From the IMG/VR virus record IMGVR_UViG_3300047157_000197, positions 124,001 through 188,000 of that record: a stretch of DNA of 64,000 bases. One strand, 5' to 3'. Of this stretch, positions 10,201 through 63,270 are shown piece after piece; within the stretch, counting starts at the first letter, position 1; each line of letters begins with the position of its first letter. A program made the position numbers and the translations under genes. The notes below the pieces were generated by a model. That model was not told where the DNA came from and ran no database searches. It saw only the letters and a list, made by a program, of their open reading frames with translations.

Positions 10201-10242
10201 TCATTCGTTGCTTCAAACGAGATAGATGGTGGTACATTCTAA
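7242..10242 (+). CDS. Tail-fibre-like protein (about 998 aa), split in this sequence by a 4-bp duplication at 7911-7918
   Basis: ORFs 7242..7919 and 7897..10242 fuse if one GCTA is removed, restoring ...ISGTSGARTIESSDG..., which matches the internal repeat ...ITGTTDARTIVSSDG.... N-terminus MAQIIKHRRG (Mtd_N-like), C-terminus IDGGTF. Confidence 0.7.
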
Positions 10243-10264
10243 TAGGAATATACCTTAATAAATC

Positions 10265-10296
10265 AATCCCCCTTGGTAACTTGGGGGATTTTTTTT
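10265..10296 (+). terminator. Intrinsic terminator
   Basis: AATCCCCC-N10-GGGGGATT stem followed by a T run, directly after the stop at 10242. Confidence 0.8.
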
Positions 10297-10403
10297 ATAC
10301 TTTTTATTTTTTTATATTTATATAGGTGGATGATAGTATAATAAATACCCAAAATCCTAATGCATTATATTTATTAGTAATATAAAAAAGATAACATAAT
10401 TAA

Positions 10404-15566: not shown

Positions 15567-15578
15567 GAAAGCAAACGA

Positions 15579-16226
15579 ATGGCACAAATAATTAAACTTA
15601 AAAGAAGTATTGCAGCTGGTAGTAAGCCAACAACATCTGATTTAGCAATTGGTGAATTGGCAATGAATGTAACGGATGGAAAAGTGTTTCTTCGTAAAAG
15701 TGGTTCTGCTGGTGATAATGTAAAAGAATTAGTAACACTTGACCATGATGGAACTTTAAGTGGTTCACTAAACATCACAGGTTCTATTACTGCATCTGCA
15801 TTCGTAGGAGATGGTTCACGATTAACAAATATAACAGTATCTCAAAACGCAACTGTAAAAAAGCAATTTACCAATTCAGTATCTTGGAGTGTAGACCATA
15901 ATTTATCTACACCAAATGCAATAATTCAAGCATACGATTCTACAAATTATCAAATAATTCCAGAAAGTGTGTTAATAATTGATGATGATAATATATTAAT
16001 TACATTTCCTGCACCTGAAAGTGGTTATGTAGTAGTTGCTAAAGGTGGTCACATTGTTAGTGGTTCAATCGAAGTAGAAAATATTAGTGGATTTGATGCA
16101 AGAGTATTAGATGAAATAAACGAAGCTGGTGTATTTAGTGGTTCAGCACAAATAACTCTAACAGGTGATGTTACAGGAACAGGTAATGCAACTGTTATAT
16201 CAACCGTTGATGGAGAAACATTTTAA
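15579..16226 (+). CDS. Fibre adaptor/structural protein (Mtd_N-like N-terminus, HNL domain, DGETF end)
   Basis: MAQIIKLKRS...GELAMNVTDGKVF; VDHNLSTPNAIIQAYD; ends VDGETF. Confidence 0.65.
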   Translation: MAQIIKLKRSIAAGSKPTTSDLAIGELAMNVTDGKVFLRKSGSAGDNVKELVTLDHDGTLSGSLNITGSITASAFVGDGSRLTNITVSQNATVKKQFTNSVSWSVDHNLSTPNAIIQAYDSTNYQIIPESVLIIDDDNILITFPAPESGYVVVAKGGHIVSGSIEVENISGFDARVLDEINEAGVFSGSAQITLTGDVTGTGNATVISTVDGETF

Positions 16227-16273
16227 TTAAAATACAATATTTATAATAAGAAAATTAATAAGGAAAAAATAAC

Positions 16274-41437: not shown

Positions 41438-41575
41438 ATGAATAAAACAGATTTAACACAACAAGATGGAATGTATTATGTAGGACACTTAATCGATATC
41501 GATGGAAGTGGTTATGTAGATGCAGAAACTGCAGAACTTATCCTATTAGAACATAATGCAGGAGTTACTGAATGA
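41438..41575 (+). CDS. Small hypothetical protein (45 aa), not in the ORF track
   Basis: MNKTDLTQQDGMYYVGHLIDIDGSGYVDAETAELILLEHNAGVTE; its TGA overlaps the ATG of the polymerase gene. Confidence 0.5.
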   Translation: MNKTDLTQQDGMYYVGHLIDIDGSGYVDAETAELILLEHNAGVTE

Positions 41576-42828
41576 TTATAGTAGAAACTAATAAAGAGAA
41601 AGAACAATTTCTCGAATATTGGAATAACGAAGAATCTAAGATTATTCCGATTTGGGAAGATTTGGATAGACATCCTATGACTAATGGGTTGTCATTTTTG
41701 TATGTCCGATTCTCAAACTTAGATTTTATACTACCATTTAATCACAATGATTGTGAAAAGTTAGAAATAGATTTATCAACCTCGAATCAAACAAAGTGGA
41801 TTTGGAACAAAAAAGGATTTCTCCAAACCGATATTAAGATAAATAACCTAAAAGATGTGCAAACTTCTTTATTCTTTGAGAAATTCCAATTATATGATAT
41901 ACAATCGAAATTAGAGGGTTTAACGAGTTTTTACTATCGTTTGGGTATAAGAGATGGTTTGGGTAAGAGTATCTCTATAATGAAGTGGAGTGAAGTACTA
42001 CGAGGTATATGTGATGAATGGGATATAAAACATACAAATCTTTGGGTGGATGAAACGATGATTCCTCTTTTATCAGATATCGAGAGAAAAGGCATTCAAG
42101 TCGATAGGGAAAAATTTTTTGATAGATGGCCAGATAATAAGAAATCTTTATGGTTCTCACATACATTCACCGAGTACAATCCATACACGATTACATCAAG
42201 ACCTTCCAATAGACATTTAGGTATCAATTATGGTGCATTAAACAAATCCGATGGTAGTAGGGGAGTATTCGTTCCAAAGAAAGGAAAGTTGTTCTTACAA
42301 TTCGATTACGATGCATATCATGTTAGGATTATTGGTAAGTTGATTAAATACAAACTACCCGATACTTCGGTTCACCAATGGTTAGCAGACCAATATGGTT
42401 GTGATTATGGGGAATCCAAAGGAAGAACGTTCCGTATCTTATATGGGGGAGTATCCGATGAAGATAGAAAAATACCATTCTTTGATAAAGTAGATAAGTT
42501 TATTTACAAGATGCAAGAAGAGAGTATTCGAAATGGGTATCTACAAACTCCAAAAGGAAGAAAGATTCCTTTAGAGTGGATTGAAAACCCCAACTCTCAA
42601 AAGTTCTTCAACTATATTCTTCAAGCGACTGAAACTGAATTCAATATTGAGGTAATGAATAAGTTGAAAACGTTGCAACTTCCTCTACCTATTCTTTATA
42701 CTTATGATTCATTCTTATTTGAGTTTGATGAAACCGAGGTAGAAACTATTAAATTAGTTAAATCCGTTCTCGAAAGTTATGGATTTCCTGTCAAAGCCGA
42801 TTGGGGGAGTGATTACTCAAAAGTTTAA
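41572..42828 (+). CDS. Short family-A DNA polymerase
   Basis: T.TSRPS, motif A LQFDYDAYHVR, motif B SKGRTFRILYGG, NYILQATET, motif C LYTYDSFLFE. Confidence 0.8.
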   Translation: MIIVETNKEKEQFLEYWNNEESKIIPIWEDLDRHPMTNGLSFLYVRFSNLDFILPFNHNDCEKLEIDLSTSNQTKWIWNKKGFLQTDIKINNLKDVQTSLFFEKFQLYDIQSKLEGLTSFYYRLGIRDGLGKSISIMKWSEVLRGICDEWDIKHTNLWVDETMIPLLSDIERKGIQVDREKFFDRWPDNKKSLWFSHTFTEYNPYTITSRPSNRHLGINYGALNKSDGSRGVFVPKKGKLFLQFDYDAYHVRIIGKLIKYKLPDTSVHQWLADQYGCDYGESKGRTFRILYGGVSDEDRKIPFFDKVDKFIYKMQEESIRNGYLQTPKGRKIPLEWIENPNSQKFFNYILQATETEFNIEVMNKLKTLQLPLPILYTYDSFLFEFDETEVETIKLVKSVLESYGFPVKADWGSDYSKV

Positions 42829-42861
42829 TATTTATATATACATTAAAAAATAAGGAAAATT

Positions 42862-43473
42862 ATGAAATTATTTAAAATATTACTGCTATCATTCATCTTG
42901 TGGGGATGTGAAGCAGAATCAATTGTTGCACAAGAATTAAGACAAGAAGTTATTGTTGAAAATGCAGTATTCAAAGTTTGGTACAATGAAGTAAAAGAAC
43001 AACCAGTAAAATTAGTTTATACATCTACTAATAGACCAAAGAATGTAGATAGAGGTTCAATGAACTTTTATAATGAATCTGATTATCATACATCTGATAA
43101 TGCTGATTATTATGCAAATGTTTGGGATAAAGGACATCTTGCTCCAGCAGCAACTTATTCTGATTCTAAAGAAAATCTACGACAAACATTTTCGTTTTTA
43201 AATTGTGCTTTACAAGACCAGTACCTTAATAGAGGTGAGTGGAGATTATTAGAAGAACAAGAAAGAAAATGGGATGATGAACAAAATTTAAGAATTGTAG
43301 TTGAACTAGTATGGGAAGATGGATATGAAATACTACCAACAGGTGGACATATTCCAACTACAATGATAAAAACAATTTACTTTGAAAACGACGGTACTTG
43401 TAGAAAATTTGTATTTCCAAATCAAAAACCAACTCAAGGTTGGGAAGAATACGAGGTAACTTGTACAGACTAA
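42862..43473 (+). CDS. DNA/RNA non-specific endonuclease (NucA/EndoG family), predicted lipoprotein
   Basis: WDKGHLAPAA, TFSFLNCALQ..LNRGEWRLLE; signal peptide ending in lipobox LWGC. Confidence 0.85.
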   Translation: MKLFKILLLSFILWGCEAESIVAQELRQEVIVENAVFKVWYNEVKEQPVKLVYTSTNRPKNVDRGSMNFYNESDYHTSDNADYYANVWDKGHLAPAATYSDSKENLRQTFSFLNCALQDQYLNRGEWRLLEEQERKWDDEQNLRIVVELVWEDGYEILPTGGHIPTTMIKTIYFENDGTCRKFVFPNQKPTQGWEEYEVTCTD

Positions 43474-49059: not shown

Positions 49060-49854
49060 ATGCCAGAAATATCCGAAGTACGACTTACATCTGAGTGGAT
49101 TACTCAAAAAAATAAAAGGAGAACAATTACAGAAGTAGAATATCTTTCCTCTAATAAACTAAAAATGGTAGAGGAAATTGATGTAATAGGAAAAACTTTA
49201 TCCGCAACTAGTAGAGGAAAAGAATTAAGACTTGAATTCGATTTTGAACCAGTTGTTATTACATTAGGTATGAGTGGTGGATTTAAAAACTACAAAGAAC
49301 GAAGTGATGATTCAGATAAACATTGGAAACATTCTCATATCAGATTTAAGATGTCAGATGGTGATTGGTTTACTTGGTCTGATATTCGTAGATTTGGTAA
49401 ATCACTTGGTGATACTTGGGGAACGAAACGAGGACCAGATATTTTTGATGAAGAAGAAGAATTTAGAAAGAACATTGTAAATAATATAGAACATAGAGAT
49501 TTTAATAAACCTGCACATGAAGTTTTAATGAACCAACAATGGTTTAATGGAATTGGAAACTATCTTAGAGCAGAGATTCTTGGTAAGTGGGATGTAAATC
49601 CTTTTCAACCAATGAGAAATATTATAAATACACCATTTTTAGACCATTTAATAGAACAAGTACATTGGTCATATCGATTAGGTGGTGGACAATTATATAC
49701 TTGGATGAATGAAAATGAATCTGCAATTGATTCCAATTTAACTTGGAATGATTGGATGCAATTTTATGGTAAACAAGAATCAATGAAAGATAAACAAAAA
49801 AGAACCTTTTGGTTTAATAAAAAATATTCAAAAAATTTGGATATAACAAAATAA
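49060..49854 (+). CDS. Fpg/Nei-family DNA glycosylase/AP lyase, NEIL1-like (zinc-less finger)
   Basis: N-terminal MPE, RGKEL, LGMSG, DIRRFG, H2TH FNGIGNYLRAEIL; Cys-free C-terminal DKQKRTFWF. Confidence 0.9.
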   Translation: MPEISEVRLTSEWITQKNKRRTITEVEYLSSNKLKMVEEIDVIGKTLSATSRGKELRLEFDFEPVVITLGMSGGFKNYKERSDDSDKHWKHSHIRFKMSDGDWFTWSDIRRFGKSLGDTWGTKRGPDIFDEEEEFRKNIVNNIEHRDFNKPAHEVLMNQQWFNGIGNYLRAEILGKWDVNPFQPMRNIINTPFLDHLIEQVHWSYRLGGGQLYTWMNENESAIDSNLTWNDWMQFYGKQESMKDKQKRTFWFNKKYSKNLDITK

Positions 49855-49869
49855 TTTTGTATATTAGTA
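49835..49869 (+). repeat. 35-bp direct repeat, left (promoter-like)
   Basis: ATTTGGATATAACAAAATAATTTTGTATATTAGTA; 33/35 identical to 51813-51847. Confidence 0.75.
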
Positions 49870-49928
49870 GCTTCAAATGTGAAAGTTTTACATTAATTAC
49901 TCCAAATTTAAAAAAAAATACAAATAAA

Positions 49929-49960
49929 TTTGGAATTGTAAAAATAATTTCGTATATTTG
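49929..49960 (+). promoter_or_regulatory. Bacteroidetes-type promoter
   Basis: TTTG(49929)-N20-TATATTTG(49953). Confidence 0.75.
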
Positions 49961-49979
49961 TATAAATAAATTAAGAAAA

Positions 49980-51707
49980 TTGAGATTTAACAATCTAAAC
50001 GCCCTAGCAGAAGCAAAGTACGCAACGGCCGTAGGAAAGTTGGACAACCCTACACAACAGAAGGTCCAGTCATTTATTAACGAACAAATCGAAATCGAAA
50101 TGAAGTCGATGAGTGACGTGTTATCTGCAACACAACAACAAAATCAGAAACTACAATTCAATCCATTAAAGTTATGGTTTGAAGGTATAACCAACATTCC
50201 ACTAGGAGTGACCGATATCTACTTCGATATTGAGAAGGTTAAGAACAAGGGATATGAAATCCACATCAGACAAGTTGGACCAGGAACAACACTTGAGACA
50301 ATTAACGGTAATTTACTTGACTCCAAAACGGTTGAATCACAAGTATTCATTCGTAAGGATAACAAATCAGGCTCAATCTATGGGTCTGGTATTGGTACAC
50401 AGTCCCAATACACAAGTAAACTTATCTACAAAGTTAAAACCAAAGGAATGGATTCATTCCATTGTTGGGATGTATTAACCGGTAAAACTTGGTTTGATGA
50501 TAAATTATCTCACGAGAGTGGGGTAATTATCGAGATGTTTGTACCATACTCTCAAAAAATGGTTAGTTATGAAAGATTTATCGATGATTTAAGATGGATG
50601 ATTTCTTTCTACGATAACAAAAACCTTGTTGGGAACAATAGTAGAACCTATCATATTGAAGCTCAAGGTTTCGATACTGGTGGTAATGATAGATTATCCT
50701 TACCAATTCACCCAACTGCAACCAATTGGGTACAACCAGATGGTAAGATTACAAAGATTCCATCATACACACACCTTACTTTAAATAAGAAAGTTTTTAA
50801 GGAACTTCCTATAATTGTTCCACATGATGATGGTGACAAGACAGTTTTACTTACAAACTTTAAGTTTGGTAAAAGAGCTGATAATTACAGAAAATCAGCT
50901 GGAGGTGAACAATGGAAAATCCCATCAAAGATAACTGGTGATATTCCTCAACTAATTGTTTACTATAAAGATTCTAAACAAATAGCGTTTACATTACCAC
51001 TTAGAGGAAACTCTGGTTTAACATCCCTTAACAATGTTACTTTAGAATGTGAAATAGCAAAGGATGATTTAAGACCCTTCTTTACTTCAACTGATAAGTT
51101 CGGTGATATTCAAGGAGTACTTAAAGCAACTTTATTCAATGAGTTAAGACAGTATCTGTTAGATAGATATCCAGATAATGATTTACTAGAAAGAGCAGTT
51201 CAACTATGGTTGTATGCTGTAATCGTTAATGATTTTGGTGGTAAGAATAACGCTAACAATCTTAGAAATTATTATGGTTGGGGATTCTTAAATAATATGA
51301 CTCCACTCAAAAGAACCAAATTCGTAATAATGGAATATGATTCAGATGAAGGTAGACAGGATTTTAGAATCTTTCTCGTTGGTGATACCAATAATAAGAT
51401 TACTAAGTTTACTAAGAGTTGTATTATTGAAGTAAAGAGAAGTGATTTCAATAGAAGAGATACTAATCAATCAATGGGTTACATTACAACGACAGTTAAC
51501 GCAACACAAATTGTTGGAGTTTCATTAAACATCAAAACAAAGAATGATAAATTATTTAAAGAATTCTTTGCTAAAGCGAATGGAACAGGTCAGTTAACAA
51601 GTGATATCAAGTATGATTTGATGGAAGTTGCTGATTGGGGATTCGAGGACGATGTTAAAGATTCGTTTACTTCTGAGGCTTTGGTTGAAAAAAACAGTAA
51701 GAAATAA
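49980..51707 (+). CDS. Divergent GHKL (MORC/Hsp90-like) ATPase fused to a C-terminal PD-(D/E)XK nuclease domain
   Basis: LWFEGITN (N box), IRQVGPG (G1), SGSIYGSGIG (G2), SGVIIEM (G3); C-terminal RQDFRIF...IIEVKR....DTNQSMGY. Start probably TTG 49980 (after the promoter) or ATG 50100. Confidence 0.55.
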   Translation: MRFNNLNALAEAKYATAVGKLDNPTQQKVQSFINEQIEIEMKSMSDVLSATQQQNQKLQFNPLKLWFEGITNIPLGVTDIYFDIEKVKNKGYEIHIRQVGPGTTLETINGNLLDSKTVESQVFIRKDNKSGSIYGSGIGTQSQYTSKLIYKVKTKGMDSFHCWDVLTGKTWFDDKLSHESGVIIEMFVPYSQKMVSYERFIDDLRWMISFYDNKNLVGNNSRTYHIEAQGFDTGGNDRLSLPIHPTATNWVQPDGKITKIPSYTHLTLNKKVFKELPIIVPHDDGDKTVLLTNFKFGKRADNYRKSAGGEQWKIPSKITGDIPQLIVYYKDSKQIAFTLPLRGNSGLTSLNNVTLECEIAKDDLRPFFTSTDKFGDIQGVLKATLFNELRQYLLDRYPDNDLLERAVQLWLYAVIVNDFGGKNNANNLRNYYGWGFLNNMTPLKRTKFVIMEYDSDEGRQDFRIFLVGDTNNKITKFTKSCIIEVKRSDFNRRDTNQSMGYITTTVNATQIVGVSLNIKTKNDKLFKEFFAKANGTGQLTSDIKYDLMEVADWGFEDDVKDSFTSEALVEKNSKK

Positions 51708-52429: not shown

Positions 52430-53233
52430 ATGGCTTTAGACATTAACGCAATCAGAAGTAGACTGAACAAACTACAAAACACACAAAGAAAATCAGATTC
52501 ACTATGGAAACCAACTCCAGGTAAACATCAAGTAAGGGTAGTTCCTTACAAATTCGATAAGGATAATCCATTTATCGAATTGTATTTTCACTACAACATT
52601 AACAACAAAACTTATTTATCACCACAATCATTTGGTAGACCAGACCCTATTGTAGAGTTTGCGGATAAACTAAAAAGAATGGGAGATAAAGAAGATTGGA
52701 AAGCAGCAAAGGCTATGGAGCCTAAGTTGAGAACTTTCGTACCTGTTGTTGTAAGAGGTGAAGAAGGCGAAGGAGTTCGTTTTTGGGGATTTGGTAAAAC
52801 AGTATATCAAGAAATTCTTGGGTATATTGCTGATCCAGATTATGGAGACATTACAGACCCAACAAGTGGTAGAGATTTAACAATCGAGTATAAATCAGCA
52901 GAAGAAGCTGGAACTACTTATCCAACTACTACTATTAGAGTTAAACCAAATGAAACACCAGTGAGTGAAGATGCTACAAAAGCAACTGCATTTATTGAAA
53001 ATCAAACTGAAATTACAGATTTATATTCTGAATTATCTTATGATGAATTAAAATCAGTATTAGAGGGATGGTTAAATCCAAGTGGTGAAGGAAAGGAAGA
53101 AACTGTATCTCAGTCTACTTTATCTCAAAGTAAACCAGTACAATCTACACCAACTACACCAAAAGCAGAAGTCAACGCTCCTCAGAAAACTGATGATGTT
53201 GCAGCTGCATTTGATGACTTATTTAACAACTAA
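52430..53233 (+). CDS. Single-stranded DNA-binding protein (T4 gp32-like)
   Basis: WKPTPGKHQVRVVP, FWGFGKTVYQEI, DITDPTSGRDL, acidic tail AFDDLFNN; precedes the recombinase. Confidence 0.8.
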   Translation: MALDINAIRSRLNKLQNTQRKSDSLWKPTPGKHQVRVVPYKFDKDNPFIELYFHYNINNKTYLSPQSFGRPDPIVEFADKLKRMGDKEDWKAAKAMEPKLRTFVPVVVRGEEGEGVRFWGFGKTVYQEILGYIADPDYGDITDPTSGRDLTIEYKSAEEAGTTYPTTTIRVKPNETPVSEDATKATAFIENQTEITDLYSELSYDELKSVLEGWLNPSGEGKEETVSQSTLSQSKPVQSTPTTPKAEVNAPQKTDDVAAAFDDLFNN

Positions 53234-53243
53234 ATCAAACTAA

Positions 53244-54371
53244 ATGGCGAAAAAGAAAGCAGTAAAAGAACTGGACCTAGCAGATATTCTGGCAGGTGAG
53301 TTAAACAAACAATCCAAAGAACAGAAAGTAGCATTTTTCTTAGATTCCGATGAAGCACCTACTAATGTAGAAGGCTGGGTATCGACTGGATGTGCTATGT
53401 TGGATGTTGCTATTTCTAATCGTCCTTTTGGTGGTTTACCCGTTGGAAGAATTACAGAAATAACAGGTTTAGAACAAAGTGGAAAATCATTAGTATCGGC
53501 ACACCTCCTTGCGGAAACACAAAAGTTAGGTGGTGTTGCTGTTCTTATTGATACAGAAACTGCAGTAAGTAGAGAATTTTTAGAAGCAATCGGTGTTGAC
53601 GTTTCTAAACTTCTATATGTAACCGCAGATTCGGTTGAACAGATTTTTGACTTTACTGAAACTATTATTGAAAAAGTTCGTGAAACATCTAAAGATAAAA
53701 TTGTAACTATCGTAGTAGATTCAGTTGCAGCAGCATCAACCAAAACAGAACTAGCAGCTGATTATGGTAAAGATGGATATGCTACTGATAAAGCAATTAT
53801 TATCTCCAAAGCAATGAGAAAGATTACCAATATGATTGGTAGACAAAAAATCTCATTAGTGTTCACAAACCAACTTAGACAGAAGATGAATGCCATGCCA
53901 TTCGGTGACCCATGGACTACAAGTGGTGGAAAAGCTCTTGCTTTTCATGCATCTGTAAGATTGAGGTTGAAAGGTATGGGACAAATCAAACAAAAGGTAA
54001 ACGGTAACGATAGGACAGTTGGAATGAAAGTAAGATGTCAAGTAGTAAAAAACAGAATGGGTCCTCCATTGAGAGCAACTGATTTTGAGATTTACTTTGA
54101 CAGAGGTATCGATAACTACGGTTCGTGGTTAAAGGTAATGAAAGAAAACAAATTGGTAAAACAAGCAGGAGCTTGGTACACATATGTAGATACCGAAACT
54201 GGTGAAGAAATTAAATTTCAATCTAAAGATTTCATAGATATTATGGAAGATAGAGATTCAGTTAGAGAACAAATTTACAAGAAAATATGTGAAGAATCAA
54301 TATTACAATATAAAACAGATACTAAAGATATTGATTCACTAGTACACGACCCTAATTTAATACCAGAATAA
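53244..54371 (+). CDS. recA: RecA/UvsX recombinase
   Basis: GRITEITGLEQSGKS, IDTE, VVDSVAA, FTNQLR, TSGGKALAFHASVRL, VKNRMGPP. Confidence 0.95.
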   Translation: MAKKKAVKELDLADILAGELNKQSKEQKVAFFLDSDEAPTNVEGWVSTGCAMLDVAISNRPFGGLPVGRITEITGLEQSGKSLVSAHLLAETQKLGGVAVLIDTETAVSREFLEAIGVDVSKLLYVTADSVEQIFDFTETIIEKVRETSKDKIVTIVVDSVAAASTKTELAADYGKDGYATDKAIIISKAMRKITNMIGRQKISLVFTNQLRQKMNAMPFGDPWTTSGGKALAFHASVRLRLKGMGQIKQKVNGNDRTVGMKVRCQVVKNRMGPPLRATDFEIYFDRGIDNYGSWLKVMKENKLVKQAGAWYTYVDTETGEEIKFQSKDFIDIMEDRDSVREQIYKKICEESILQYKTDTKDIDSLVHDPNLIPE

Positions 54372-54605: not shown

Positions 54606-55658
54606 AAGAACTATACAAGAACATATTAGAGTCAGTTGAAACTGATAGAACTCAAAATATCGATAAACACAAGAATTCTCGTGTATTAATTATTGATGGG
54701 TTAAATACATTTATTAGATGTTGGACATCTATACCAACTATGAATGATGATGGAGACCATGTTGCAGGAGTAACTGGTAGTCCTACGTTCTATTGGATAT
54801 GCAATCAGACAAACTCAACCGACTCGAGTTGTTGTTGTTTTTGATGGAAAAAATGGTTCACAGAGTAGAAAAAAAATATATCCTGAATATAAGGCTGGAA
54901 GAGATAAAAACAAACTTAGAGTAAATCGTCAGTACGCTGATATGATGAACGATGAGGATGAAAGAGAATCTATGAAACGTCAGTATGTTTGGTTAATGGA
55001 AATGATGCATGAACTTCCACTTACTACTATGATATACGATGGTGTAGAAGCAGATGATATTATGGCATATATTCCAACTAAAATTTTAAAAGAAGGAGAA
55101 CAAGCTGTAGTTATGTCAACTGATAAAGATTTTTTACAATTAGTTGATGAAGATACAATTGTTTGGTCACCTACTAAAAAGAAAATTTATAATACAAATC
55201 GAATCAAAGAAGAATTTGGTTTAGACCCAAAAAATTTATTACTTTATAGAGTACTTGATGGTGATAAATCAGATAATATACCAGGTGTATATGGATGTGG
55301 TATTAAAACACTTCTAAAGAGGTTTCCAGAACTTACAGATGATAATGAACTATCCGTTGATAATTTACTTGAACTGGCAGAACAAAAAAAGGAAGAAACT
55401 AAAGGTAAGATTAAATTATACAATGATATCTTAGAATCTAAAAAACAGATTATCATGAATGAGAAATTAATGCAATTAAAAGATGTTGATATCTCAGGTC
55501 AAATAAAAATGAATGTTTTAGATAGATTTAATGAAGATATCAAACCATTAAATAAAATAGATTTCCTGAAAGTTTGTTTGAAATATAAAGTTACAGATAA
55601 ATTTGGAGACCTGAATTCTTGGTTGAAAGATACTTTTGGTAATTTAATAACTGATTAA
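54602..55658 (+). CDS. 5'-3' exonuclease/RNase H (FEN/PolI N-terminal family), about 351 aa, split by one extra base near 54779
   Basis: LIIDGLNTFIR in the first ORF; removing one base gives VTGVLRSIGYAI...VVFDGK...YKAGR, joining EADD, STDKDFLQL and GDKSDNIPGV. Confidence 0.85.
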
Positions 55659-55690
55659 TTTGGATATTAAAAATAAATTTCGTATATTTG
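55659..55690 (+). promoter_or_regulatory. Bacteroidetes-type promoter
   Basis: TTTG-N20-TATATTTG. Confidence 0.75.
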
Positions 55691-55713
55691 TATAAGTTTT
55701 AAAAACCCAATCA

Positions 55714-57078
55714 ATGCAAGAACAAAAAGTAGATACATTATCGAAATACGGGCAATCATTTCAATCAAAGGTTGTATCTGCACTTCTTACTGATACTAAG
55801 TTCCTCGATACAATAGGGGAAATAACCACTCCTAAGTTCTTTGAGAACGATGCTAACAAGTGGATTATATCCGAGATACTTGATTATCACAATGAGTACA
55901 AAAAAGCTCCTACATTAGATGTATTTAAGGTACAGTTATCAAAAGTAGATAATGATATTCTTAAAAAAACTGTAATAGACCAGTTAAAGCATGTTCATAC
56001 ACAAATTGGTAATGTAGATTTAGATTATATTAAAAATGAATTTAAAGATTTTTGTATAAATCAAAATCTTAAGGGAGTAATTCTACGTTCAGTTGATTTA
56101 TTACAAGCTGGTTCTTATGATAGAATCAAAGATTTAGTAGATGCTGCAATGAAAGTTGGTAATGAAACGGATTTAGGATTAGATTATAAAAACGATTTCG
56201 ATGAACGAATGGAAGATTTAAATCGTTCAACCGTTGCAACTAATTGGAAACCTATAAATGATTTAATGGATGGTGGATTAGGACCTGGAGAACTTGGTGT
56301 AATCGTTGCTCCATCTGGTGTAGGTAAAACATGGATACTTACTGCACTTGGTGCAGATGCAGTTAGAAATGGTTTAAGTGTGGTTCATTACTCAATGGAA
56401 TTATCAGAACATTATGTTGGTGCTAGATATGATACTGTATTTACTCAAATACCATCAACAGATTTGAAAGATAAAAAAGAAGAAGTTAAATCAAAGATAC
56501 AATCATTACAAGGAAAGTTACTTATTAAGTATTTCCCTCCAAAGGGTGTTTCTGTTAAGAAATTAAATCAACATATTGAAAAGATGATTGCTTCTGGTAA
56601 CAAACCAGATTTAATCATTGTAGATTATGCAGATTTACTATTATCAGATTCAAACAAAACTGATTCAACTTATGCAGAACAAGGTGGTGTTTATATTGAC
56701 CTTCGTGGTATGGGCGGACATTTAGAAATCCCAATATGGACAGCATCTCAAACCAATCGTTCAGCAATTGATTCAGAAGTAATTGAAGCAGATAAGATTG
56801 CAGATTCTTATGCTAAAGTAATGAATGCAGATTTCATTATGAGTTGGAGTAGAAAATCAAAAGATAAATTGAATGATACTGCAAGAGCTCACATTATGAA
56901 AAACAGATTTGGACCTGATGGAATTACGTTTCCATGTAAGATGAATACGAATACAGGTTACATTGAAGTATATGATGGTAATTCACCAGATGGTGTAATT
57001 GCAACAAAACAATCTGCAAGTGGACAATTAGAAACTAAAAAACTCCTACATAAGAAATATGTGGAAAATATGGGGTAA
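55714..57078 (+). CDS. Replicative DnaB-like helicase (T4 gp41-like)
   Basis: APSGVGKT, SMEL, IIVDYADLL, TASQTNR, KNRFGPDG. Confidence 0.92.
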   Translation: MQEQKVDTLSKYGQSFQSKVVSALLTDTKFLDTIGEITTPKFFENDANKWIISEILDYHNEYKKAPTLDVFKVQLSKVDNDILKKTVIDQLKHVHTQIGNVDLDYIKNEFKDFCINQNLKGVILRSVDLLQAGSYDRIKDLVDAAMKVGNETDLGLDYKNDFDERMEDLNRSTVATNWKPINDLMDGGLGPGELGVIVAPSGVGKTWILTALGADAVRNGLSVVHYSMELSEHYVGARYDTVFTQIPSTDLKDKKEEVKSKIQSLQGKLLIKYFPPKGVSVKKLNQHIEKMIASGNKPDLIIVDYADLLLSDSNKTDSTYAEQGGVYIDLRGMGGHLEIPIWTASQTNRSAIDSEVIEADKIADSYAKVMNADFIMSWSRKSKDKLNDTARAHIMKNRFGPDGITFPCKMNTNTGYIEVYDGNSPDGVIATKQSASGQLETKKLLHKKYVENMG

Positions 57079-57248
57079 CCCTATCAAAAAAATTATAACA
57101 TAGTTATGATAAAAGTAGTATATGTGTAAAAATGAATAAACACAAAAAAAAATTATAAAAATTAATATCGTTTTTCAATATATACTATAATTATAAACAC
57201 GACCAAACAATTGGTCACTTCAAACACAAATTAAAAAAAATAAAATTT

Positions 57249-57419
57249 ATGGCAAATTCACAAGAATTATTTGAACAGATTAAAGATTTATTCGTTCAAT
57301 TCGAAACAGAACACAATGGTGGTTCTAAAGCAGCTAAATCAAGAGCAAGAAAAGCAATTGGTGAAGTTAAAAAATTAGTAACAGATTATAGAAAAGCTTC
57401 AGTAGAAGAATCAAAATAA
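57249..57419 (+). CDS. Histone H1-like protein (Hc1 family, Bacteroidetes type), 56 aa, not in the ORF track
   Basis: MANSQELFEQIKDLFVQFETEHNGGSKAAKSRARKAIGEVKKLVTDYRKASVEESK, containing the G.KAA..RARK...L....RK.S signature. Confidence 0.75.
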   Translation: MANSQELFEQIKDLFVQFETEHNGGSKAAKSRARKAIGEVKKLVTDYRKASVEESK

Positions 57420-57429
57420 TTAAATTACT

Positions 57430-58425
57430 ATGAGCAAAATTTTCCAAGAAAGAATTCCATTTAAACCATTTGAATATCCAATCTACTATACAGAAGGTTG
57501 GTTAAAACAGGCACAGGCATTTTGGTTACATACTGAAATACCGATGCAGGGTGATGTAAAAGATTGGAATGAACGTTTAACCCCAGCTGAGAAAAACTTA
57601 GTGGGGAATATTCTACTTGGTTTTGCTCAAACTGAATGTGCAGTTTCTGATTATTGGACTAATATGGTTACCGATTGGTTTCCTAAACACGAGATAAGAC
57701 AGATGGCGATGATGTTTGGTTCACAAGAAACAATTCATGCTACTGCATATTCATACTTAAATGAAACATTAGGATTAGATGACTTCTCAGCGTTTTTGCA
57801 CGAACCTGCAGTTGCTGAGAAGTTTGAACTCCTTACTGCTACTACTAACAATTGGACACATGAAGATTTGGCAACAAATCCAAAAGCAAGACAAGAAGTT
57901 GGTAGAAGTTTAGCAATCTTCTCTGCATTTAGTGAGGGAGTATCCCTATACTCTTCATTTGCAGTACTCTACTCATTCCAAATGAGAAATCTACTAAAAG
58001 GTATCGGACAACAAATGAAATGGTCTGTAAGAGATGAATCTCTACATTCTAAGATGGGTTGTCAATTGTTCAGACATATGTGTGAAGAATATCCTACATT
58101 ATTAGATGAGTGTAAAGAATCAATAGAAGAGGCTTCAAGATTAATCGTTCAGTTAGAAACAAACTTTATTGATATGATATTTGAACAAGGTGATTTAGAA
58201 AACCTTGAGAAAGAAGATTTAAAAGAGTTTATTAAAGCAAGAACAAATACAAAATTACAAGAATTGGGCTATAACCCTATTCACGAATTCGATAAACCGA
58301 AGGCTGAAAAGCTAGAATGGTTTTATCATCTTACAGGTGGACTCACTCATACTGATTTTTTTGCTGTTAGACCTACTGATTATAGTAAGGCTAATGAAGG
58401 TGAAGATTGGGGTGATTTATTTTAA
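57430..58425 (+). CDS. nrdB: Ribonucleotide reductase class I beta subunit
   Basis: PFEYP, AQTE, ETIHATAY, EGVSLYSSF, RDESLH, TDFF. Confidence 0.95.
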   Translation: MSKIFQERIPFKPFEYPIYYTEGWLKQAQAFWLHTEIPMQGDVKDWNERLTPAEKNLVGNILLGFAQTECAVSDYWTNMVTDWFPKHEIRQMAMMFGSQETIHATAYSYLNETLGLDDFSAFLHEPAVAEKFELLTATTNNWTHEDLATNPKARQEVGRSLAIFSAFSEGVSLYSSFAVLYSFQMRNLLKGIGQQMKWSVRDESLHSKMGCQLFRHMCEEYPTLLDECKESIEEASRLIVQLETNFIDMIFEQGDLENLEKEDLKEFIKARTNTKLQELGYNPIHEFDKPKAEKLEWFYHLTGGLTHTDFFAVRPTDYSKANEGEDWGDLF

Positions 58426-58429
58426 ATAA

Positions 58430-59020
58430 ATGAAAAACAAAAAGGTTACAATAACAGATACGAGAATATCGTATCAAGAAGATGATTCCAAAATTGTAAT
58501 GGATGTAATATCCAAAGAACTGATGGAATTTTATTCTAATATAGTTACACAAAATGGTGGAAAGGTATTAGATGTTGGATTTGGTTTAGGGTATAGTGCT
58601 AATGCAATCTATAATAAGGTTGGTAATTATCATTGTATTGAATCAAACCCACAAATCTTTAAGGAGGCTCAGAAGTGGGCTGAAGATAAAGAGGATGTTC
58701 ATTTATATTTTGGTAATTGGGTAGATGTAATCCCAACTTTAGATGTTAAGTTTGATGGTATCTTTATGGATACTTACGATGACCCTAACTATTCTAAGTT
58801 TGAAGATTATTCAAAACTAATTTCAAATGAAAATTGTGTATTATCAGTTTTTAGTTATTTTGCATTAAGAGATACTAAAGATTTACATTCACATTATTTT
58901 GAAATTAAATCAAAATATAGAGAAAGCTATCCAAAAATAATTGAAAAGGGACACACTTGTAATTGGAGTTATTTTATAGATAGTAAATTCCAAAAAAAGA
59001 AATTAAATGAAACCATTTGA
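58430..59020 (+). CDS. Class I SAM-dependent methyltransferase, GAMT/RMT2-like
   Basis: GGKVLDVGFGLGYSA, IESNPQ, GNWVDV, FDGIFMDTY. Confidence 0.8.
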   Translation: MKNKKVTITDTRISYQEDDSKIVMDVISKELMEFYSNIVTQNGGKVLDVGFGLGYSANAIYNKVGNYHCIESNPQIFKEAQKWAEDKEDVHLYFGNWVDVIPTLDVKFDGIFMDTYDDPNYSKFEDYSKLISNENCVLSVFSYFALRDTKDLHSHYFEIKSKYRESYPKIIEKGHTCNWSYFIDSKFQKKKLNETI

Positions 59021-59429
59021 TTATTTAAACACAAGTGTTAAATCATATATAAGAGTAAGTAAAATACATGGAATTGGTTTATTTACTTTGGTTGATATAA
59101 AAAAAGGAGAACATATTTTTCCACTATGGAAAGGAAAAACTGATTGGTATAAAATAAAGTTTAGTAAAGCTAAGTTATTACCAAAAGAAGTATTATCATA
59201 CATACTTCGTTCTTATGGTTCAAAAATAGAAAATGATAATTCAGACATCAATTTTAGATTGGTAAAGGATACTAACTTTTTATTTTCAAACCCATTGTGT
59301 TTACTTAATACCGAATATGAAAATGGTAATGTAGATACTAACGGTATAGCAATAAAGGATATAAAAATAAATAAAGAGATAACAGCAACCTATACAGGCG
59401 AAGGTTACTCACAAGTAAAATTAATATAA
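59007..59429 (+). CDS. SET-domain protein (degenerate NHS motif)
   Basis: SKIHGIGLFTLVDIKKGEHI ... LLNTEYENGNV ... IAIKDIKINKEITATY. Confidence 0.7.
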   Translation: MKPFDYLNTSVKSYIRVSKIHGIGLFTLVDIKKGEHIFPLWKGKTDWYKIKFSKAKLLPKEVLSYILRSYGSKIENDNSDINFRLVKDTNFLFSNPLCLLNTEYENGNVDTNGIAIKDIKINKEITATYTGEGYSQVKLI

Positions 59430-59430
59430 A

Positions 59431-61215
59431 ATGGCAGTAAAAAATTACGGTGACGAATTAGGTTGGGAACTTGATGTAGATTTCCCATCATGGGCAAATA
59501 CAGAGATATACGTTAAAACAATATCAAATGGATATTTGTTACCAGGTGAAAAACCAAAGGATGCCTATTGGAGAGTTGCATCAAGAGTTGCAATGAGATT
59601 AGAAAAACCTCAGTTAGCAACCAAATTCTTTGATTACATTTGGAAAGGTTGGTTAAACTTAGCAACACCAGTTCTTTCAAATACTGGTACTGATAGAGGA
59701 TTACCTATATCTTGTTTTGGTATTGATGTTGCCGATTCTATATATGATATTGGTTCAAAGAACTTAGAACTAATGTTACTTGCAAAACATGGTGGTGGTG
59801 TTGGAATTGGTGTAAATCAAATTAGACCAGCAGGAGCTACTATTACAGGTAATGGAACATCAGATGGTGTTGTACCATTTTGTAAAATATACGATTCTAC
59901 AATACTTGCAACAAACCAAGGTTCGGTAAGAAGAGGAGCAGCATCTGTTAACCTTAATATTGAACACGAAGATTTCGAAGAATGGTTAGAAATCAGAGAA
60001 CCTAAAGGAGATGTAAATAGACAATCACTTAATCTACACCAATGTGCAGTTGTAGGTGATAAGTTTATGAGAAAACTTGAACAAGGAGAACCTGATGCGA
60101 GAAGAAAGTGGGGAAAATTACTACAAAAAAGAAAAGCAACTGGTGAACCATACATCATGTACAAAGGGAATATCAATAAAGCTAATCCTGAAATGTACAA
60201 AAAAAATGGATTAAAAGTTCATATGACAAACATATGTTCTGAAATTACTTTACATACAGATGAGAACCATTCATTTGTTTGTTGTTTATCATCAGTAAAT
60301 CTTGCTAAGTACAACGAGTGGAGAGATACTGATTTAGTTTATACAGCAACTTGGTTCTTAGATGGAGTACTTTCTGAATTTATTCAAAAGGCTAAAAACA
60401 TGAAAGGGTTTGAACATTCTGTTGCATCTGCTGAAAAAGGTAGAGCATTAGGATTGGGAGTTTTAGGATGGCACACTTACCTACAACAAAATGGTATTCC
60501 ATTTGAAGGTATGGAGGCTCAATTTGAAACTCGTAAGATTTTTTCTCAGTTAAAGATAGAATCAGAAAGAGCATCAAGAGATTTAGCATCAGAATATGGT
60601 GAACCTCTATGGTGTAGAGAAAGTGGATTTAGAAATACTCACTTAAGAGCAGTTGCTCCAACAGTTAGTAACTCTAAATTAGCTGGAAATGTATCTGCTG
60701 GTATTGAACCATGGGCGGCGAATGTATTCACCGAACAAACTGCAAAAGGAACTTTCATTAGAAAGAACAATGAGTTAGTAAAGGTTTTAAGAAAAGCAGG
60801 TATCAATAACAAAGAAACTTGGGATAAGATAATGGAAGATGGTGGTTCTGTTCAAGGTATTAAAGAACTTGATAAGTGGTGTTACTTAGCTGGTAAAATG
60901 GTACTTTGTAATGATGTAGAAAATGGAGATAGAGATAAGATTTATCCTGTTAAAGATGTTTTCAGAACTTTCAAAGAAATAAATCAAATGGATTTGGTTA
61001 AACAAGCTGGTGTAAGACAACAGTATATTGACCAAGGAGTTTCATTAAACTTAGCATTCCCTTCCATTGCATCACCGAAATGGATTAATCAAGTAACTAT
61101 GGAAGCTTGGAAACAAGGAATTAAAACGTTGTATTATATGAGAACTGAATCAGTTCTTAGAGGTGATATAGCAACACGAGCAGTTGATCCCGATTGTGTG
61201 GCATGTGATGGTTAG
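59431..61215 (+). CDS. nrdA: Ribonucleotide reductase class I alpha subunit (no ATP cone)
   Basis: ATPVLSN, ISCF, NQGSVRRGA, TNICSEI, APTVSNS, KTLYY, C-terminal CVAC. Confidence 0.95.
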   Translation: MAVKNYGDELGWELDVDFPSWANTEIYVKTISNGYLLPGEKPKDAYWRVASRVAMRLEKPQLATKFFDYIWKGWLNLATPVLSNTGTDRGLPISCFGIDVADSIYDIGSKNLELMLLAKHGGGVGIGVNQIRPAGATITGNGTSDGVVPFCKIYDSTILATNQGSVRRGAASVNLNIEHEDFEEWLEIREPKGDVNRQSLNLHQCAVVGDKFMRKLEQGEPDARRKWGKLLQKRKATGEPYIMYKGNINKANPEMYKKNGLKVHMTNICSEITLHTDENHSFVCCLSSVNLAKYNEWRDTDLVYTATWFLDGVLSEFIQKAKNMKGFEHSVASAEKGRALGLGVLGWHTYLQQNGIPFEGMEAQFETRKIFSQLKIESERASRDLASEYGEPLWCRESGFRNTHLRAVAPTVSNSKLAGNVSAGIEPWAANVFTEQTAKGTFIRKNNELVKVLRKAGINNKETWDKIMEDGGSVQGIKELDKWCYLAGKMVLCNDVENGDRDKIYPVKDVFRTFKEINQMDLVKQAGVRQQYIDQGVSLNLAFPSIASPKWINQVTMEAWKQGIKTLYYMRTESVLRGDIATRAVDPDCVACDG

Positions 61216-62571: not shown

Positions 62572-63270
62572 ATGACAGTTATAGAAGCAACTTCACCTGG
62601 TGATGCTTGGGTAAAAGTATCAAAACATTTATTAGAACATGGTGTAAGAGTAGGTAATCTTACAGAAGAACTTAATGTGATTACCGAAATCACAGAATTT
62701 AAATCAGATGATTGGTTTGATGGACACTTCAGAGAAATTATGGGAGATGATAGAATTGATTTCGCTAAAACAGTAACCTTTCTTAAACCAGAACAAAAGA
62801 AATCAGATAACCCATTCTTTGATGAGGGAGAGGGATTAGATTATAAATTTATTAAAGACCATTACCATCAATCCTATTGGGGTAGAATGGTATCTTGGAG
62901 AGGTGAATTTAATCAAATAGAAAATGTAATCAAAATTCTATCAACTGGTAAAGCAGTAAAACGATGTGAACTTATTATTTTTGACCCTAAGAAAGATGCA
63001 AGGAATCCATATTCACAACCTTGTATGGTTATGATTGATTTAAAACCAAGAAATGGTAAATTATATCTAACATCAGTACTTCGTTCAAATAGAGTATCTA
63101 AAAGTGGTTATGCAGATTACACAGCATTAACCGAAATGGGACATTTCCTTGCTGAACAAAGTGGATTAGAATTAGGAAAAGTAACTACCCTCGCTTGTTC
63201 GTGTCATATTGGTGATATGGATAATGAAAAAAAGAAAACAAACAAGTTATTAGAAGTATTAAATAGATAG
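62572..63270 (+). CDS. Thymidylate synthase / dCMP hydroxymethylase-like protein (atypical)
   Basis: QSYWGR, QPCM (catalytic Cys), LRSNRVSKSGYADY, SCHIG. Confidence 0.7.
   Translation: MTVIEATSPGDAWVKVSKHLLEHGVRVGNLTEELNVITEITEFKSDDWFDGHFREIMGDDRIDFAKTVTFLKPEQKKSDNPFFDEGEGLDYKFIKDHYHQSYWGRMVSWRGEFNQIENVIKILSTGKAVKRCELIIFDPKKDARNPYSQPCMVMIDLKPRNGKLYLTSVLRSNRVSKSGYADYTALTEMGHFLAEQSGLELGKVTTLACSCHIGDMDNEKKKTNKLLEVLNR

What the first reader, a model, noticed from the sequence alone, without database searches (positions are those of the whole stretch)
49060..49854. Phage glycosylase closely resembling animal NEIL1
Beyond general Fpg/Nei motifs, colinear blocks match human NEIL1 as I recall it: SATSRGKELRL (SASARGKELRL), HSHIRF (HAHLRF), DIRRFG, RGPDIFDEEEEFRKNIVNNI...FNKPAHEVLMNQQWFNGIGNYLRAEIL (RGPCVLQEYQQFRENVLRNL...FDRPICEALLDQRFFNGIGNYLRAEIL) and zinc-less finger DKQKRTFWF (DRHGRTIWF). 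NEIL1 has a patchy, mainly metazoan distribution, with zinc-less Nei enzymes also in mimivirus. A phage copy bears on the origin of NEIL1 and may service oxidised or modified pyrimidines in the phage DNA.
Basis: partly seen in the sequence, partly recalled or inferred. Interest (0 to 1): 0.7.

Follow-up and report, generated by a model that had tools for sequence, protein, structure and literature searches.

The report
NEIL1-type DNA repair glycosylase in phage
A large marine bacteriophage carries an intact DNA-repair enzyme of the same subfamily as human NEIL1, and this subfamily, until now described as animal, turns out to be common in uncultured tailed phages and in one group of marine bacteria.

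Summary
It is an Fpg/Nei-superfamily DNA glycosylase/AP lyase of the NEIL1 type. Human NEIL1 is by far its best solved relative (phmmer 3.6e-26, against 6.5e-6 for any Fpg). A profile built only from non-eukaryotic relatives scores NEIL1 at 241 bits and everything else, mimivirus Nei1 included, at 88 bits or less. The AF2 model (pLDDT 92.8) overlays NEIL1 at Z 26.7. The catalytic Pro2, Glu3 and Lys54, the Met71/Arg110/Phe112 triad, the H2TH motif and a cysteine-free "zincless finger" carrying Arg248 are all conserved. The host genome is a 276-kb marine myovirus, and the gene sits in its replication/recombination block. At least 455 IMG/VR contigs encode relatives, and many of these are tailed jumbo phages. 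Marine Poribacteria MAGs carry the gene chromosomally. In ML trees this family plus eukaryotic NEIL1 splits from the Fpg/Nei rows sampled (100/98). The eukaryotic sequences form one clade of their own (100/98), so the phage protein is not sister to metazoan NEIL1. The backbone is unresolved (AU p = 0.37), so the direction of transfer is open. The likely role is replication-linked excision of oxidised bases. I found no support for a role on modified bases. It is a new member of a known kind, of moderate interest.

The parts
49060..49854 (+). NEIL1-type Fpg/Nei DNA glycosylase/AP lyase gene (264 aa plus stop)
   Evidence: ORF. Human NEIL1 is the best PDB match by phmmer at 3.6e-26, by family profile at 1.6e-70 over the full length, by Foldseek at E 7e-21 and TM 0.79, and by VIA-align at Z 26.7. 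dN/dS is 0.18-0.27 against 73-76%-identical homologues.
49060..49401 (+). N-terminal catalytic beta-sandwich domain (aa 1-114). It holds the Pro2 nucleophile, Glu3, Glu6, Lys54, Met71, Arg110 and Phe112.
   Evidence: Pfam PF01149 at 1.4e-16 and 61.6 bits, against a cut-off of 25.5. These residues are invariant in 41-44 family members. They align with human NEIL1 P2, E3, K54, M81, R118 and F120 in the HMMER alignment; the NEIL1 residue numbering is from my own knowledge.
49456..49626 (+). Helix-two-turn-helix (H2TH) DNA-binding region (aa 133-189), including the block FNGIGNYLRAEIL that is identical to human NEIL1
   Evidence: Pfam PF06831 is weak (0.002, 18.5 bits, below the 34.7 cut-off). The block is identical to NEIL1 in the PDB alignment. 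AF2 predicts helices at 132-141, 146-155 and 167-177 with pLDDT of about 98.
49747..49818 (+). Zincless finger (aa 230-253): a cysteine-free beta-hairpin carrying invariant Arg248 (codon 49801-49803)
   Evidence: PF09292 Neil1-DNA_bind is weak (0.019, 15.2 bits, below the cut-off of 25), but the domain is recorded for many relatives. The family profile aligns through human NEIL1 residue 282, covering DRHGRTIWF. AF2 predicts strands at 240-243 and 249-252. There is no CxxC pair.
52430..54371 (+). Context: gp32-like ssDNA-binding protein (52430-53233) and UvsX-like recombinase (53244-54371)
   Evidence: PHROG 1192 at 1.9e-21 and PHROG 97 at 2.8e-73.
54942..61215 (+). Context: exonuclease, DnaB-like replicative helicase, and ribonucleotide reductase small and large subunits
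   Evidence: PHROGs 107, 19, 86 and 84.
41572..43473 (+). Context: ORF with a DNA-polymerase-like C-terminal part (41572-42828) and a nuclease (42862-43473). The nuclease recurs within 8 kb of the NEIL1-like gene in 13-15 other viral loci.
   Evidence: PHROG 17 and PHROG 14168; co-occurrence counts.

Best explanation
The ORF encodes a working bifunctional DNA glycosylase/AP lyase of the NEIL1 subfamily of the Fpg/Nei superfamily, carried by a ~276-kb marine T4-like myovirus. Shown: it has the NEIL1 fold. It has an N-terminal Met-Pro-Glu, so Pro2 would be the Schiff-base nucleophile once the initiator Met is removed. It has Lys54, the Met71/Arg110/Phe112 residues that fill the gap left by the flipped base, the H2TH motif, and a zinc-free beta-hairpin with Arg248 that contacts the lesion phosphate in NEIL1. 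It is under purifying selection and lies in the phage replication/recombination/nucleotide block. Inferred from what is established for NEIL1, Nei and Fpg: the enzyme flips out oxidised pyrimidines, ring-opened purines or hydantoins, cuts the glycosidic bond through a Pro2 imine, and nicks the strand by beta,delta-elimination. This leaves a one-nucleotide gap with phosphate ends. Also inferred: it cleans phage DNA of oxidative and UV-linked base damage during replication in sunlit seawater, possibly on single-stranded or fork DNA as human NEIL1 does. Host enzymes or unrecognised phage enzymes would have to remove the 3' phosphate and seal the gap, because no phage PNK-type phosphatase, AP endonuclease or ligase was detected.
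For: NEIL1 is the top hit by sequence, by a profile free of eukaryotic sequences (241 bits against at most 88 bits for all other solved Fpg/Nei proteins) and by structure. The AF2 model has pLDDT 92.8. Catalytic and DNA-contact residues are invariant in 41-44 members. There is no Cys4 finger. dN/dS is 0.18-0.27. The identical protein is indexed in 92 blocks of the metagenome collection, with the same neighbouring genes in seven of the eight places shown (the eighth differs upstream). Neighbours in the window are a DNA-polymerase-like ORF, a nuclease, SSB, UvsX, an exonuclease, a helicase and RNR. Neighbours in relatives are a 3'-5' exonuclease, a helicase, topoisomerase II, a nuclease and guanylate kinase. 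In the ML tree the family plus eukaryotic NEIL1 separates from Fpg/Nei at 100/98.
Against: No enzymology exists for any member of this phage/bacterial branch. The flexible lesion-capping loop differs from human NEIL1: the family consensus GGGQLxDWKNP stands where human NEIL1 has GGKGYG, with Gly and Leu aligned to human K/R242 and Y244. Substrate range may therefore differ. The eukaryotic C-terminal ~100-aa interaction tail is absent. No downstream BER genes were found in the phage genome (PNK3P, ATP- or NAD-dependent ligase, ExoIII, EndoIV), so a complete phage-encoded pathway is not shown. Gene order around the gene is not conserved outside close relatives.
Confidence: 0.8

Rival explanations
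1. The enzyme mainly handles modified bases. It would either police or process 5-hydroxymethyl-pyrimidine-type modifications in the phage's own DNA, or attack host DNA that lacks them.
For: The window holds a second, divergent thymidylate-synthase-family ORF (62572-63270), and its best solved relative is a CMP 5-hydroxymethylase (4e-6; PF00303 at 26.8 bits). The genome also has a canonical ThyA. Human NEIL1 has been reported to act on oxidised 5-methylcytosine derivatives (title and abstract of PMC5566547, listed).
Against: The candidate hydroxymethylase occurs in only 2 of 40 other NEIL1-carrying viral records. Both are close relatives of this phage, and it is missing from the one complete 256-kb record. 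Marine Poribacteria carry the same enzyme as an ordinary chromosomal gene. The modification itself is unproven.
Confidence: 0.07
2. It is a counter-defence or takeover tool. It would act chiefly as an AP lyase or glycosylase that processes abasic sites made by host defence glycosylases, or that helps degrade host DNA.
For: The gene is linked to nucleases and exonucleases in the window and in relatives. The Fpg/Nei family has a strong AP-lyase activity (established knowledge).
Against: No defence or anti-defence genes were seen next to it. The gene sits in core replication modules. The same family is a vertically inherited single-copy chromosomal gene in Poribacteria, and it is the only Fpg/Nei-family (PF01149) gene found in those MAGs, which fits housekeeping repair.
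Confidence: 0.06
3. It is an ordinary bacterial-type Fpg or Nei that only looks like NEIL1, or a eukaryotic gene mis-assembled into a phage contig.
For: Pfam's H2TH and Neil1-DNA_bind models score below their cut-offs on this one sequence. NCBIfam's best models are Fpg equivalogs, all far below cut-off.
Against: There is a 150-bit gap between NEIL1 and all other solved family members, using a profile that contains no eukaryotic sequence. The tree splits it from Fpg/Nei at 100/98. There is no zinc-finger cysteine pattern. The same gene with the same phage neighbours appears on many independent contigs. Gene GC is 0.30, against 0.32 for the window.
Confidence: 0.02

Closest known systems
Human/metazoan NEIL1 (endonuclease VIII-like 1; PDB 1TDH, 5ITQ, 5ITX, 6LW*)
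   Same: The fold matches over the whole catalytic core: Z 26.7, rmsd 2.2-2.8 A over 242-248 residues, 30-32% identity. It shares the N-terminal Met-Pro-Glu, Lys54, the Met/Arg/Phe void-filling residues, an identical FNGIGNYLRAEIL block in the H2TH, and a zincless finger with the conserved Arg (window R248; human R277 by my numbering).
   Different: The phage protein is 264 aa and lacks the ~100-aa disordered C-terminal tail of NEIL1. It lacks several surface insertions, since NEIL1 residues 1-282 align to 256 profile positions. The lesion-capping loop differs: GGGQL... stands where human NEIL1 has GGKGYG, so the K/R242 and Y244 positions are not conserved. It lies outside the monophyletic eukaryotic clade.
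Mimivirus MvNei1 (L315; PDB 3A42/3A45/3A46), published as 'a viral NEIL1 ortholog'
   Same: It is a virus-encoded Fpg/Nei enzyme without a zinc finger, of similar length.
   Different: It is much more distant. It scores 88 bits against the family profile, the same as bacterial and plant Fpg, while human NEIL1 scores 241 bits, and only residues 1-222 align. It was not detected at E<=1 by the single sequence. It comes from a giant virus of amoebae rather than a tailed phage. PMC3188539 also places MvNei1 outside the NEIL1 clade.
Bacterial Fpg/MutM and E. coli Nei (endonuclease VIII)
   Same: They share the same superfamily fold (Z 21.5-23.7), the same N-terminal Pro/Glu chemistry, and an H2TH.
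   Different: Identity is 20-24%. They have a Cys4 zinc finger where the phage protein has a zincless hairpin. They are separated in the tree at 100/98. NCBIfam Fpg and Nei equivalog models score 40-69 bits against cut-offs of 203-252.
Fpg-like proteins of cultured phages (Bacillus phage G gp292, Bacillus phage Nachito)
   Same: They are phage-encoded Fpg/Nei superfamily members.
   Different: tblastn identity is only 27-29%. They group with bacterial Fpg in the tree. No cultured phage in the 50,697-record collection has a NEIL1-type gene. No tailed phage in BFVD has one either: its only significant phage hit is the Fpg-like gp292 of Bacillus phage G.

Membership tests
Fpg/Nei superfamily | Fapy_DNA_glyco N-terminal domain, with the N-terminal Pro (after Met1) as nucleophile and Glu3 as the catalytic acid | tested here: met
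   PF01149 at 61.6 bits against a cut-off of 25.5. M1, P2, E3 and E6 are invariant in the family alignments.
Fpg/Nei superfamily | Helix-two-turn-helix DNA-binding motif | tested here: met
   The Pfam H2TH model is below its cut-off (18.5 against 34.7 bits). However, the motif block is identical to NEIL1 in the PDB alignment, the region is modelled as helices at pLDDT of about 98, and it superposes on NEIL1 and MutM.
NEIL1 subfamily | Zincless finger: a C-terminal beta-hairpin without the four Zn-binding Cys, carrying the conserved DNA-contact Arg | tested here: met
   There is no CxxC pair. PF09292 is weak on this sequence (15.2 bits, below the cut-off of 25) but is recorded for many relatives. 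The profile alignment runs through human DRHGRTIWF. AF2 predicts a hairpin at 240-243/249-252. R248 is invariant.
NEIL1 subfamily | Closer to NEIL1 than to any other Fpg/Nei subfamily (Fpg1/2, Nei, plant/fungal Fpg, NEIL2, NEIL3, MvNei1/2) | tested here: met
   With a profile built without eukaryotic sequences, NEIL1 scores 241 bits and all other solved members score at most 88 bits. With profile A1, NEIL3 scores 36 bits and NEIL2 27.5 bits.
NEIL1 subfamily | Phylogenetic placement with NEIL1 against Fpg/Nei | tested here: met
   The careful ML tree puts the ingroup (phage, bacterial and eukaryotic NEIL1) against Fpg/Nei at 100/98. Limits: NEIL2, NEIL3, MvNei, plant/fungal Fpg and actinobacterial Nei were not in the tree and were judged only by profile scores.
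Eukaryotic (metazoan) NEIL1 clade proper | Membership of the monophyletic eukaryotic clade, with a long C-terminal tail | tested here: not met
   The eukaryotic sequences form their own clade at 100/98 and the query lies elsewhere. The protein ends at residue 264 with no tail.
NEIL1 subfamily | Glycosylase activity on oxidised pyrimidines, Fapy and hydantoins, with beta,delta-elimination | not testable with these tools
   This needs enzyme assays.
Bacterial Fpg / Nei | C-terminal Cys4 zinc finger, and a score above the NCBIfam equivalog cut-offs | tested here: not met
   No Cys4 pattern. TIGR00577 scores 68.6 bits against 203.3, and NF007763 (Nei) scores 40.1 against 252.

The most novel reading that the evidence does not exclude
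Eukaryotic NEIL1 may not be a eukaryotic or metazoan invention. It may be one offshoot of an older and far more diverse family of tailed-phage and marine-bacterial zincless Nei enzymes, acquired by an early eukaryote through horizontal transfer. In the outgroup-rooted trees the eukaryotic clade is nested among the short phage and bacterial sequences, but the backbone is unsupported.
Probability: 0.3. Interest if true: 0.65.

Novelty: new member of a known kind. Interest (0 to 1): 0.45.

Why it matters
NEIL1 is a much-studied human base-excision enzyme, linked to replication-associated repair, RNA-editing-dependent specificity and cancer variants. The nine-clade classification of the Fpg/Nei family lists NEIL1 as metazoan, with mimivirus Nei1 as its only viral relative (PMC3188539). 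Three points follow from this analysis. First, true NEIL1-type enzymes are abundant in uncultured tailed phages: at least 455 IMG/VR contigs encode one, and these enzymes are much closer to human NEIL1 than the mimivirus protein is. Second, they are a stable chromosomal gene in a marine Poribacteria lineage, where no other Fpg/Nei-family (PF01149) gene was found. Third, eukaryotic NEIL1 is a single clade within or beside this radiation. This gives small, tail-less, easily expressed NEIL1 homologues for structural and mechanistic work. It turns the origin of NEIL1 into a question that can be tested. It also adds an oxidative-damage glycosylase to the repair genes known from marine jumbo phages. 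It is not a new mechanism, and annotation pipelines already label these proteins 'endonuclease VIII-like 1'.

Tried and rejected
1. Giant-virus origin of the related 'viral' contigs. The NCLDV capsid family PF04451 was found in 0 of 40 records, though that search had no positive control. A tail-sheath homologue of the window's own was found in 20 of the 40 fragmentary records. The nearest ESM Atlas clusters are 89-95% viral and mostly Uroviricota.

2. A complete phage-encoded BER pathway. No PNK3P, ATP- or NAD-dependent ligase, ExoIII-family or EndoIV-family Pfam hit was found in the 276-kb genome.

3. Conserved gene order as a clue to a partner. Outside close relatives, no window neighbour recurs in more than 13 of the 80 loci, and most recur in only 0-3; the most frequent is the PHROG 14168 nuclease (13).

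4. A link to DNA modification. The candidate hydroxymethylase is not co-distributed with the glycosylase.

5. MAG hits as evidence of bacterial carriage. The Saprospirales and Flavobacteriaceae MAG contigs (L012, L013) are phage-like. The 4.8-kb Neomarinimicrobiota contig (L003) is ambiguous. Only the Poribacteria loci are clearly chromosomal.

6. Resolving whether eukaryotic NEIL1 is nested in or sister to the phage/bacterial branch. The AU test gave p = 0.374, so this is not resolved.

7. Literature. Six full-text searches found no paper on phage or bacterial NEIL1 orthologues. One hit (PMC8323127) only used commercial endonuclease VIII as a reagent.

8. Reference sequences for NEIL2, NEIL3, MvNei1/2, plant/fungal Fpg and actinobacterial Nei could not be fetched as tool-given sequences, so they are missing from the tree.

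Full report
**Observation.** Its ATG follows the stop of a small upstream ORF by 2 nt. All the quoted peptide blocks are present in the translation.

**What kind of protein it is.**
- Pfam gives a clear Fapy_DNA_glyco N-terminal domain (61.6 bits, cut-off 25.5). It also gives weak, sub-threshold hits to H2TH and to Neil1-DNA_bind.
- NCBIfam's bacterial Fpg and Nei equivalogs all score far below their cut-offs.
- PHROGs has only an unannotated family.
- Against all PDB sequences, the top 15 hits are human NEIL1 (3.6e-26). The best Fpg is at 6.5e-6, E. coli Nei at 0.057 and mimivirus Nei2 at 0.84. Mimivirus Nei1 is not listed at all.
- I then built a profile from 41 short, non-eukaryotic relatives (A2). 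It scores human NEIL1 at 240.8 bits (E 1.6e-70) over the full length, residues 1-282 including the zincless finger. The next best hits are mimivirus Nei1 (87.9 bits), Lactococcus and Arabidopsis Fpg (about 87) and E. coli Nei (56). With profile A1, NEIL3 scores about 36 bits and NEIL2 27.5. The NEIL1 affinity therefore does not come from one sequence or from eukaryotic rows in the profile.

**Structure.** An AF2 model built on the family alignment is confident (pLDDT 92.8, pTM 0.90).
- Foldseek's first 50 PDB matches are all human NEIL1 (E down to 7e-21, TM 0.79, about 272 columns, 30% identity).
- VIA-align gives Z 26.7 with rmsd 2.2-2.8 A over 242-248 residues for NEIL1. MutM/Fpg gives Z 21.5-23.7 at 20-24% identity.
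- The model has the N-terminal beta-sandwich, the helical H2TH domain and a C-terminal two-stranded hairpin at 240-243/249-252.
- The tail has no CxxC pair.

**Conserved residues.** These residues are invariant across 41-44 members: M1, P2, E3, E6, G53, K54, E55, G70, M71, D108, R110, F112, Q159, G166, Y168, P181, Y236 and R248. In the printed alignments they correspond to the NEIL1 catalytic Pro/Glu/Lys, the Met/Arg/Phe void-filling residues, the H2TH Asn-containing block and the finger Arg. The human residue numbers are from my own knowledge. One region differs: where human NEIL1 has GGKGYG, the loop holding the edited K/R242 and Y244, the family has GGGQLxDWKNP.

**The genome.** The window is bases 124001-188000 of a 275,970-bp IMG/VR virus record that CheckV rates complete. 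It is a tailed myovirus.
- Structural genes: tail sheath (24809-27160), baseplate and tail-fibre proteins (7897-20194) and a tape-measure protein.
- Genes around the glycosylase: a DNA-polymerase-like ORF and a nuclease upstream. Downstream lie a gp32-like SSB, UvsX, an exonuclease, a DnaB-like helicase and both RNR subunits.
- GC of the gene (0.30) matches the window (0.32).
- The identical protein is indexed in 92 blocks of the metagenome collection. In seven of the eight places shown the neighbouring genes are the same; in the eighth (L130) two upstream genes differ. The DNA differs by at most 2 synonymous bases.
- Against homologues that are 73-76% identical, dN/dS is 0.18-0.27.

It is a real, selected phage gene and not an assembly chimera.

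**Distribution.**
- The 5.8-billion-protein search gives 429 hits. Most are 255-295 aa, many are labelled 'endonuclease VIII-like 1' by JGI, and some lie on contigs of up to 525 kb.
- The exhaustive search of 50%-identity representatives gives 798 hits at E<=1e-3. Short proteins come first, and longer proteins of 350-630 aa appear from about 1e-27.
- At least 455 IMG/VR contigs encode a relative. I searched 40 of the longer ones. None has an NCLDV capsid, though that search had no positive control. Twenty have a tail-sheath homologue. CheckV completeness values imply genomes of roughly 250-330 kb.
- The nearest ESM Atlas clusters are 89-95% viral, mostly Uroviricota, and carry PF01149 together with PF09292.
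- No cultured phage among 50,697 records has anything closer than Fpg-like proteins at 23-29% identity.
- BFVD holds only giant-virus Fpg-like proteins and phage G gp292.
- Neighbours in the related phage loci are again replication and nucleotide genes: a 3'-5' exonuclease, a phosphoesterase, guanylate kinase, a sigma factor, a helicase, a nuclease and topoisomerase II. Exact gene order is not conserved.

**Bacteria.** A scan of GTDB species genomes found 11 loci.
- The Saprospirales and Flavobacteriaceae MAG contigs are phage-like: the genes run on one strand and almost every neighbour matches IMG/VR loci. The 4.8-kb Neomarinimicrobiota contig is ambiguous.
- The 'Ca. Poribacteria' loci are chromosomal. 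They have sulfatase, RlmL-type methyltransferase, YkuD and GFO-oxidoreductase neighbours. The same gene order holds in four MAG loci (L008-L011), with divergence parallel to the flanking genes. In those four loci the gene's GC equals that of the flanks; in two other Poribacteria loci (L004, L006) the gene is 2-6 points lower.
- In these MAGs the NEIL1-type gene is the only PF01149 hit, whereas more distant relatives carry a canonical 285-aa Fpg.

**Phylogeny.** I built a 144-row quick tree and an 88-row careful tree (LG+C20+F+G4 PMSF). Both give the same picture.
- The outgroup was E. coli Fpg and Nei, phage G and Nachito Fpg, and six bacterial Fpg sequences. It separates from the NEIL1-type ingroup at 100/98.
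- The long sequences, together with a few short ones, form a single clade at 100/98. They are eukaryotic where a source names them: oyster, the choanoflagellate Salpingoeca, the amoebozoan Planoprotostelium and the euglenid Ploeotia.
- The query groups with P0039 and L003 at 100/100. That trio is sister to the Poribacteria genes at 100/98.
- The rest of the backbone is a near-polytomy. With the outgroup root the eukaryotic clade is nested among the short sequences, but support is only 83/92 and 83/40.
- The AU test does not reject monophyly of all non-eukaryotic members (delta lnL 5.2, p = 0.374).

The phage protein therefore belongs to the NEIL1 family but is not sister to metazoan NEIL1. Whether eukaryotes received the gene from phages or bacteria, or the reverse, or neither, is open. 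NEIL2, NEIL3, MvNei, plant/fungal Fpg and actinobacterial Nei were not in the trees.

**Function.** The enzyme class is well supported. The biological role is inferred. The placement in replication modules fits replication-linked removal of oxidised bases, and so does the known preference of human NEIL1 for single-stranded and fork DNA (established knowledge). I found no phage 3'-phosphatase/PNK, AP endonuclease or ligase by Pfam, so later steps probably use host enzymes.

The window does hold a divergent thymidylate-synthase-family ORF (62572-63270), and its best solved relative is a CMP 5-hydroxymethylase. However, it occurs in only 2 of 40 other NEIL1-carrying records, and both are close relatives of this phage.

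**Known or new.** The published family classification lists nine clades, with NEIL1 as 'Metazoans', and puts MvNei1 outside it (PMC3188539). Six full-text searches found nothing on phage or bacterial NEIL1 orthologues. Annotation pipelines already give the KEGG-style name. I therefore rate it a new member of a known kind: a known enzyme type in a previously undescribed, large branch in phages and marine bacteria. The interest is moderate and mostly evolutionary, plus the value of a compact NEIL1 model enzyme.

Noticed in passing
window 62572-63270 (+): This is a second, divergent thymidylate-synthase-family ORF of 232 aa (PF00303 at 26.8 bits; PHROG 'thymidylate synthase' at about 1e-12). Its best solved relative is a CMP 5-hydroxymethylase (MilA, 4e-6), ahead of true thymidylate synthases. 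The genome also has a canonical ThyA at G000:37174-38055. It may be a pyrimidine hydroxymethylase, which would hint at modified phage DNA. It was found in only 2 of 40 other NEIL1-carrying records.
   Followed up: partly
L008, L009, L010, L011 (and L004-L007), match at about 8001-8810 of each locus: Marine 'Ca. Poribacteria' MAGs carry the NEIL1-type gene as a syntenic chromosomal gene between an RlmL-type methyltransferase and a YkuD transpeptidase. It is the only Fpg/Nei-family gene found in them. More distant relatives have a canonical 285-aa Fpg instead. This looks like displacement of Fpg by a NEIL1-type enzyme.
   Followed up: partly
L012 and L013 (GTDB MAG contigs, Saprospirales and Flavobacteriaceae): These MAG contigs look like phage DNA: the genes run on one strand and nearly all neighbours match IMG/VR loci. 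They are either mis-binned viral contigs or prophages. They may hint at Bacteroidota hosts for part of this phage radiation.
   Followed up: partly
window 41572-42828 (+): This 418-aa ORF matches a DNA-polymerase PHROG only over its last ~110 residues (profile positions 1106-1232 of 1445). It may be a split or fragmented polymerase gene.
   Followed up: no
L097 (Bacillus phage G, gp292), locus 367-1233: The deposited CDS starts at 388, seven codons downstream of an in-frame Pro-Glu start context (translation M/V/L-P-E-V...). The annotated protein therefore lacks the catalytic N-terminal Pro, and the real start is probably upstream.
   Followed up: no
window 49855-50099: An AT-rich gap of about 245 bp lies between the glycosylase stop and the first ATG of the next large ORF. 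Gene callers disagree on that ORF's start (616, 575 or 535 aa). The gap probably holds a promoter. That ORF has no family match.
   Followed up: no
whole genome G000: No Pfam hit was found for PNK 3'-phosphatase, ATP- or NAD-dependent DNA ligase, ExoIII-family or EndoIV-family AP endonuclease in a 276-kb T4-like phage genome. T4 itself encodes a ligase and a PNK.
   Followed up: partly
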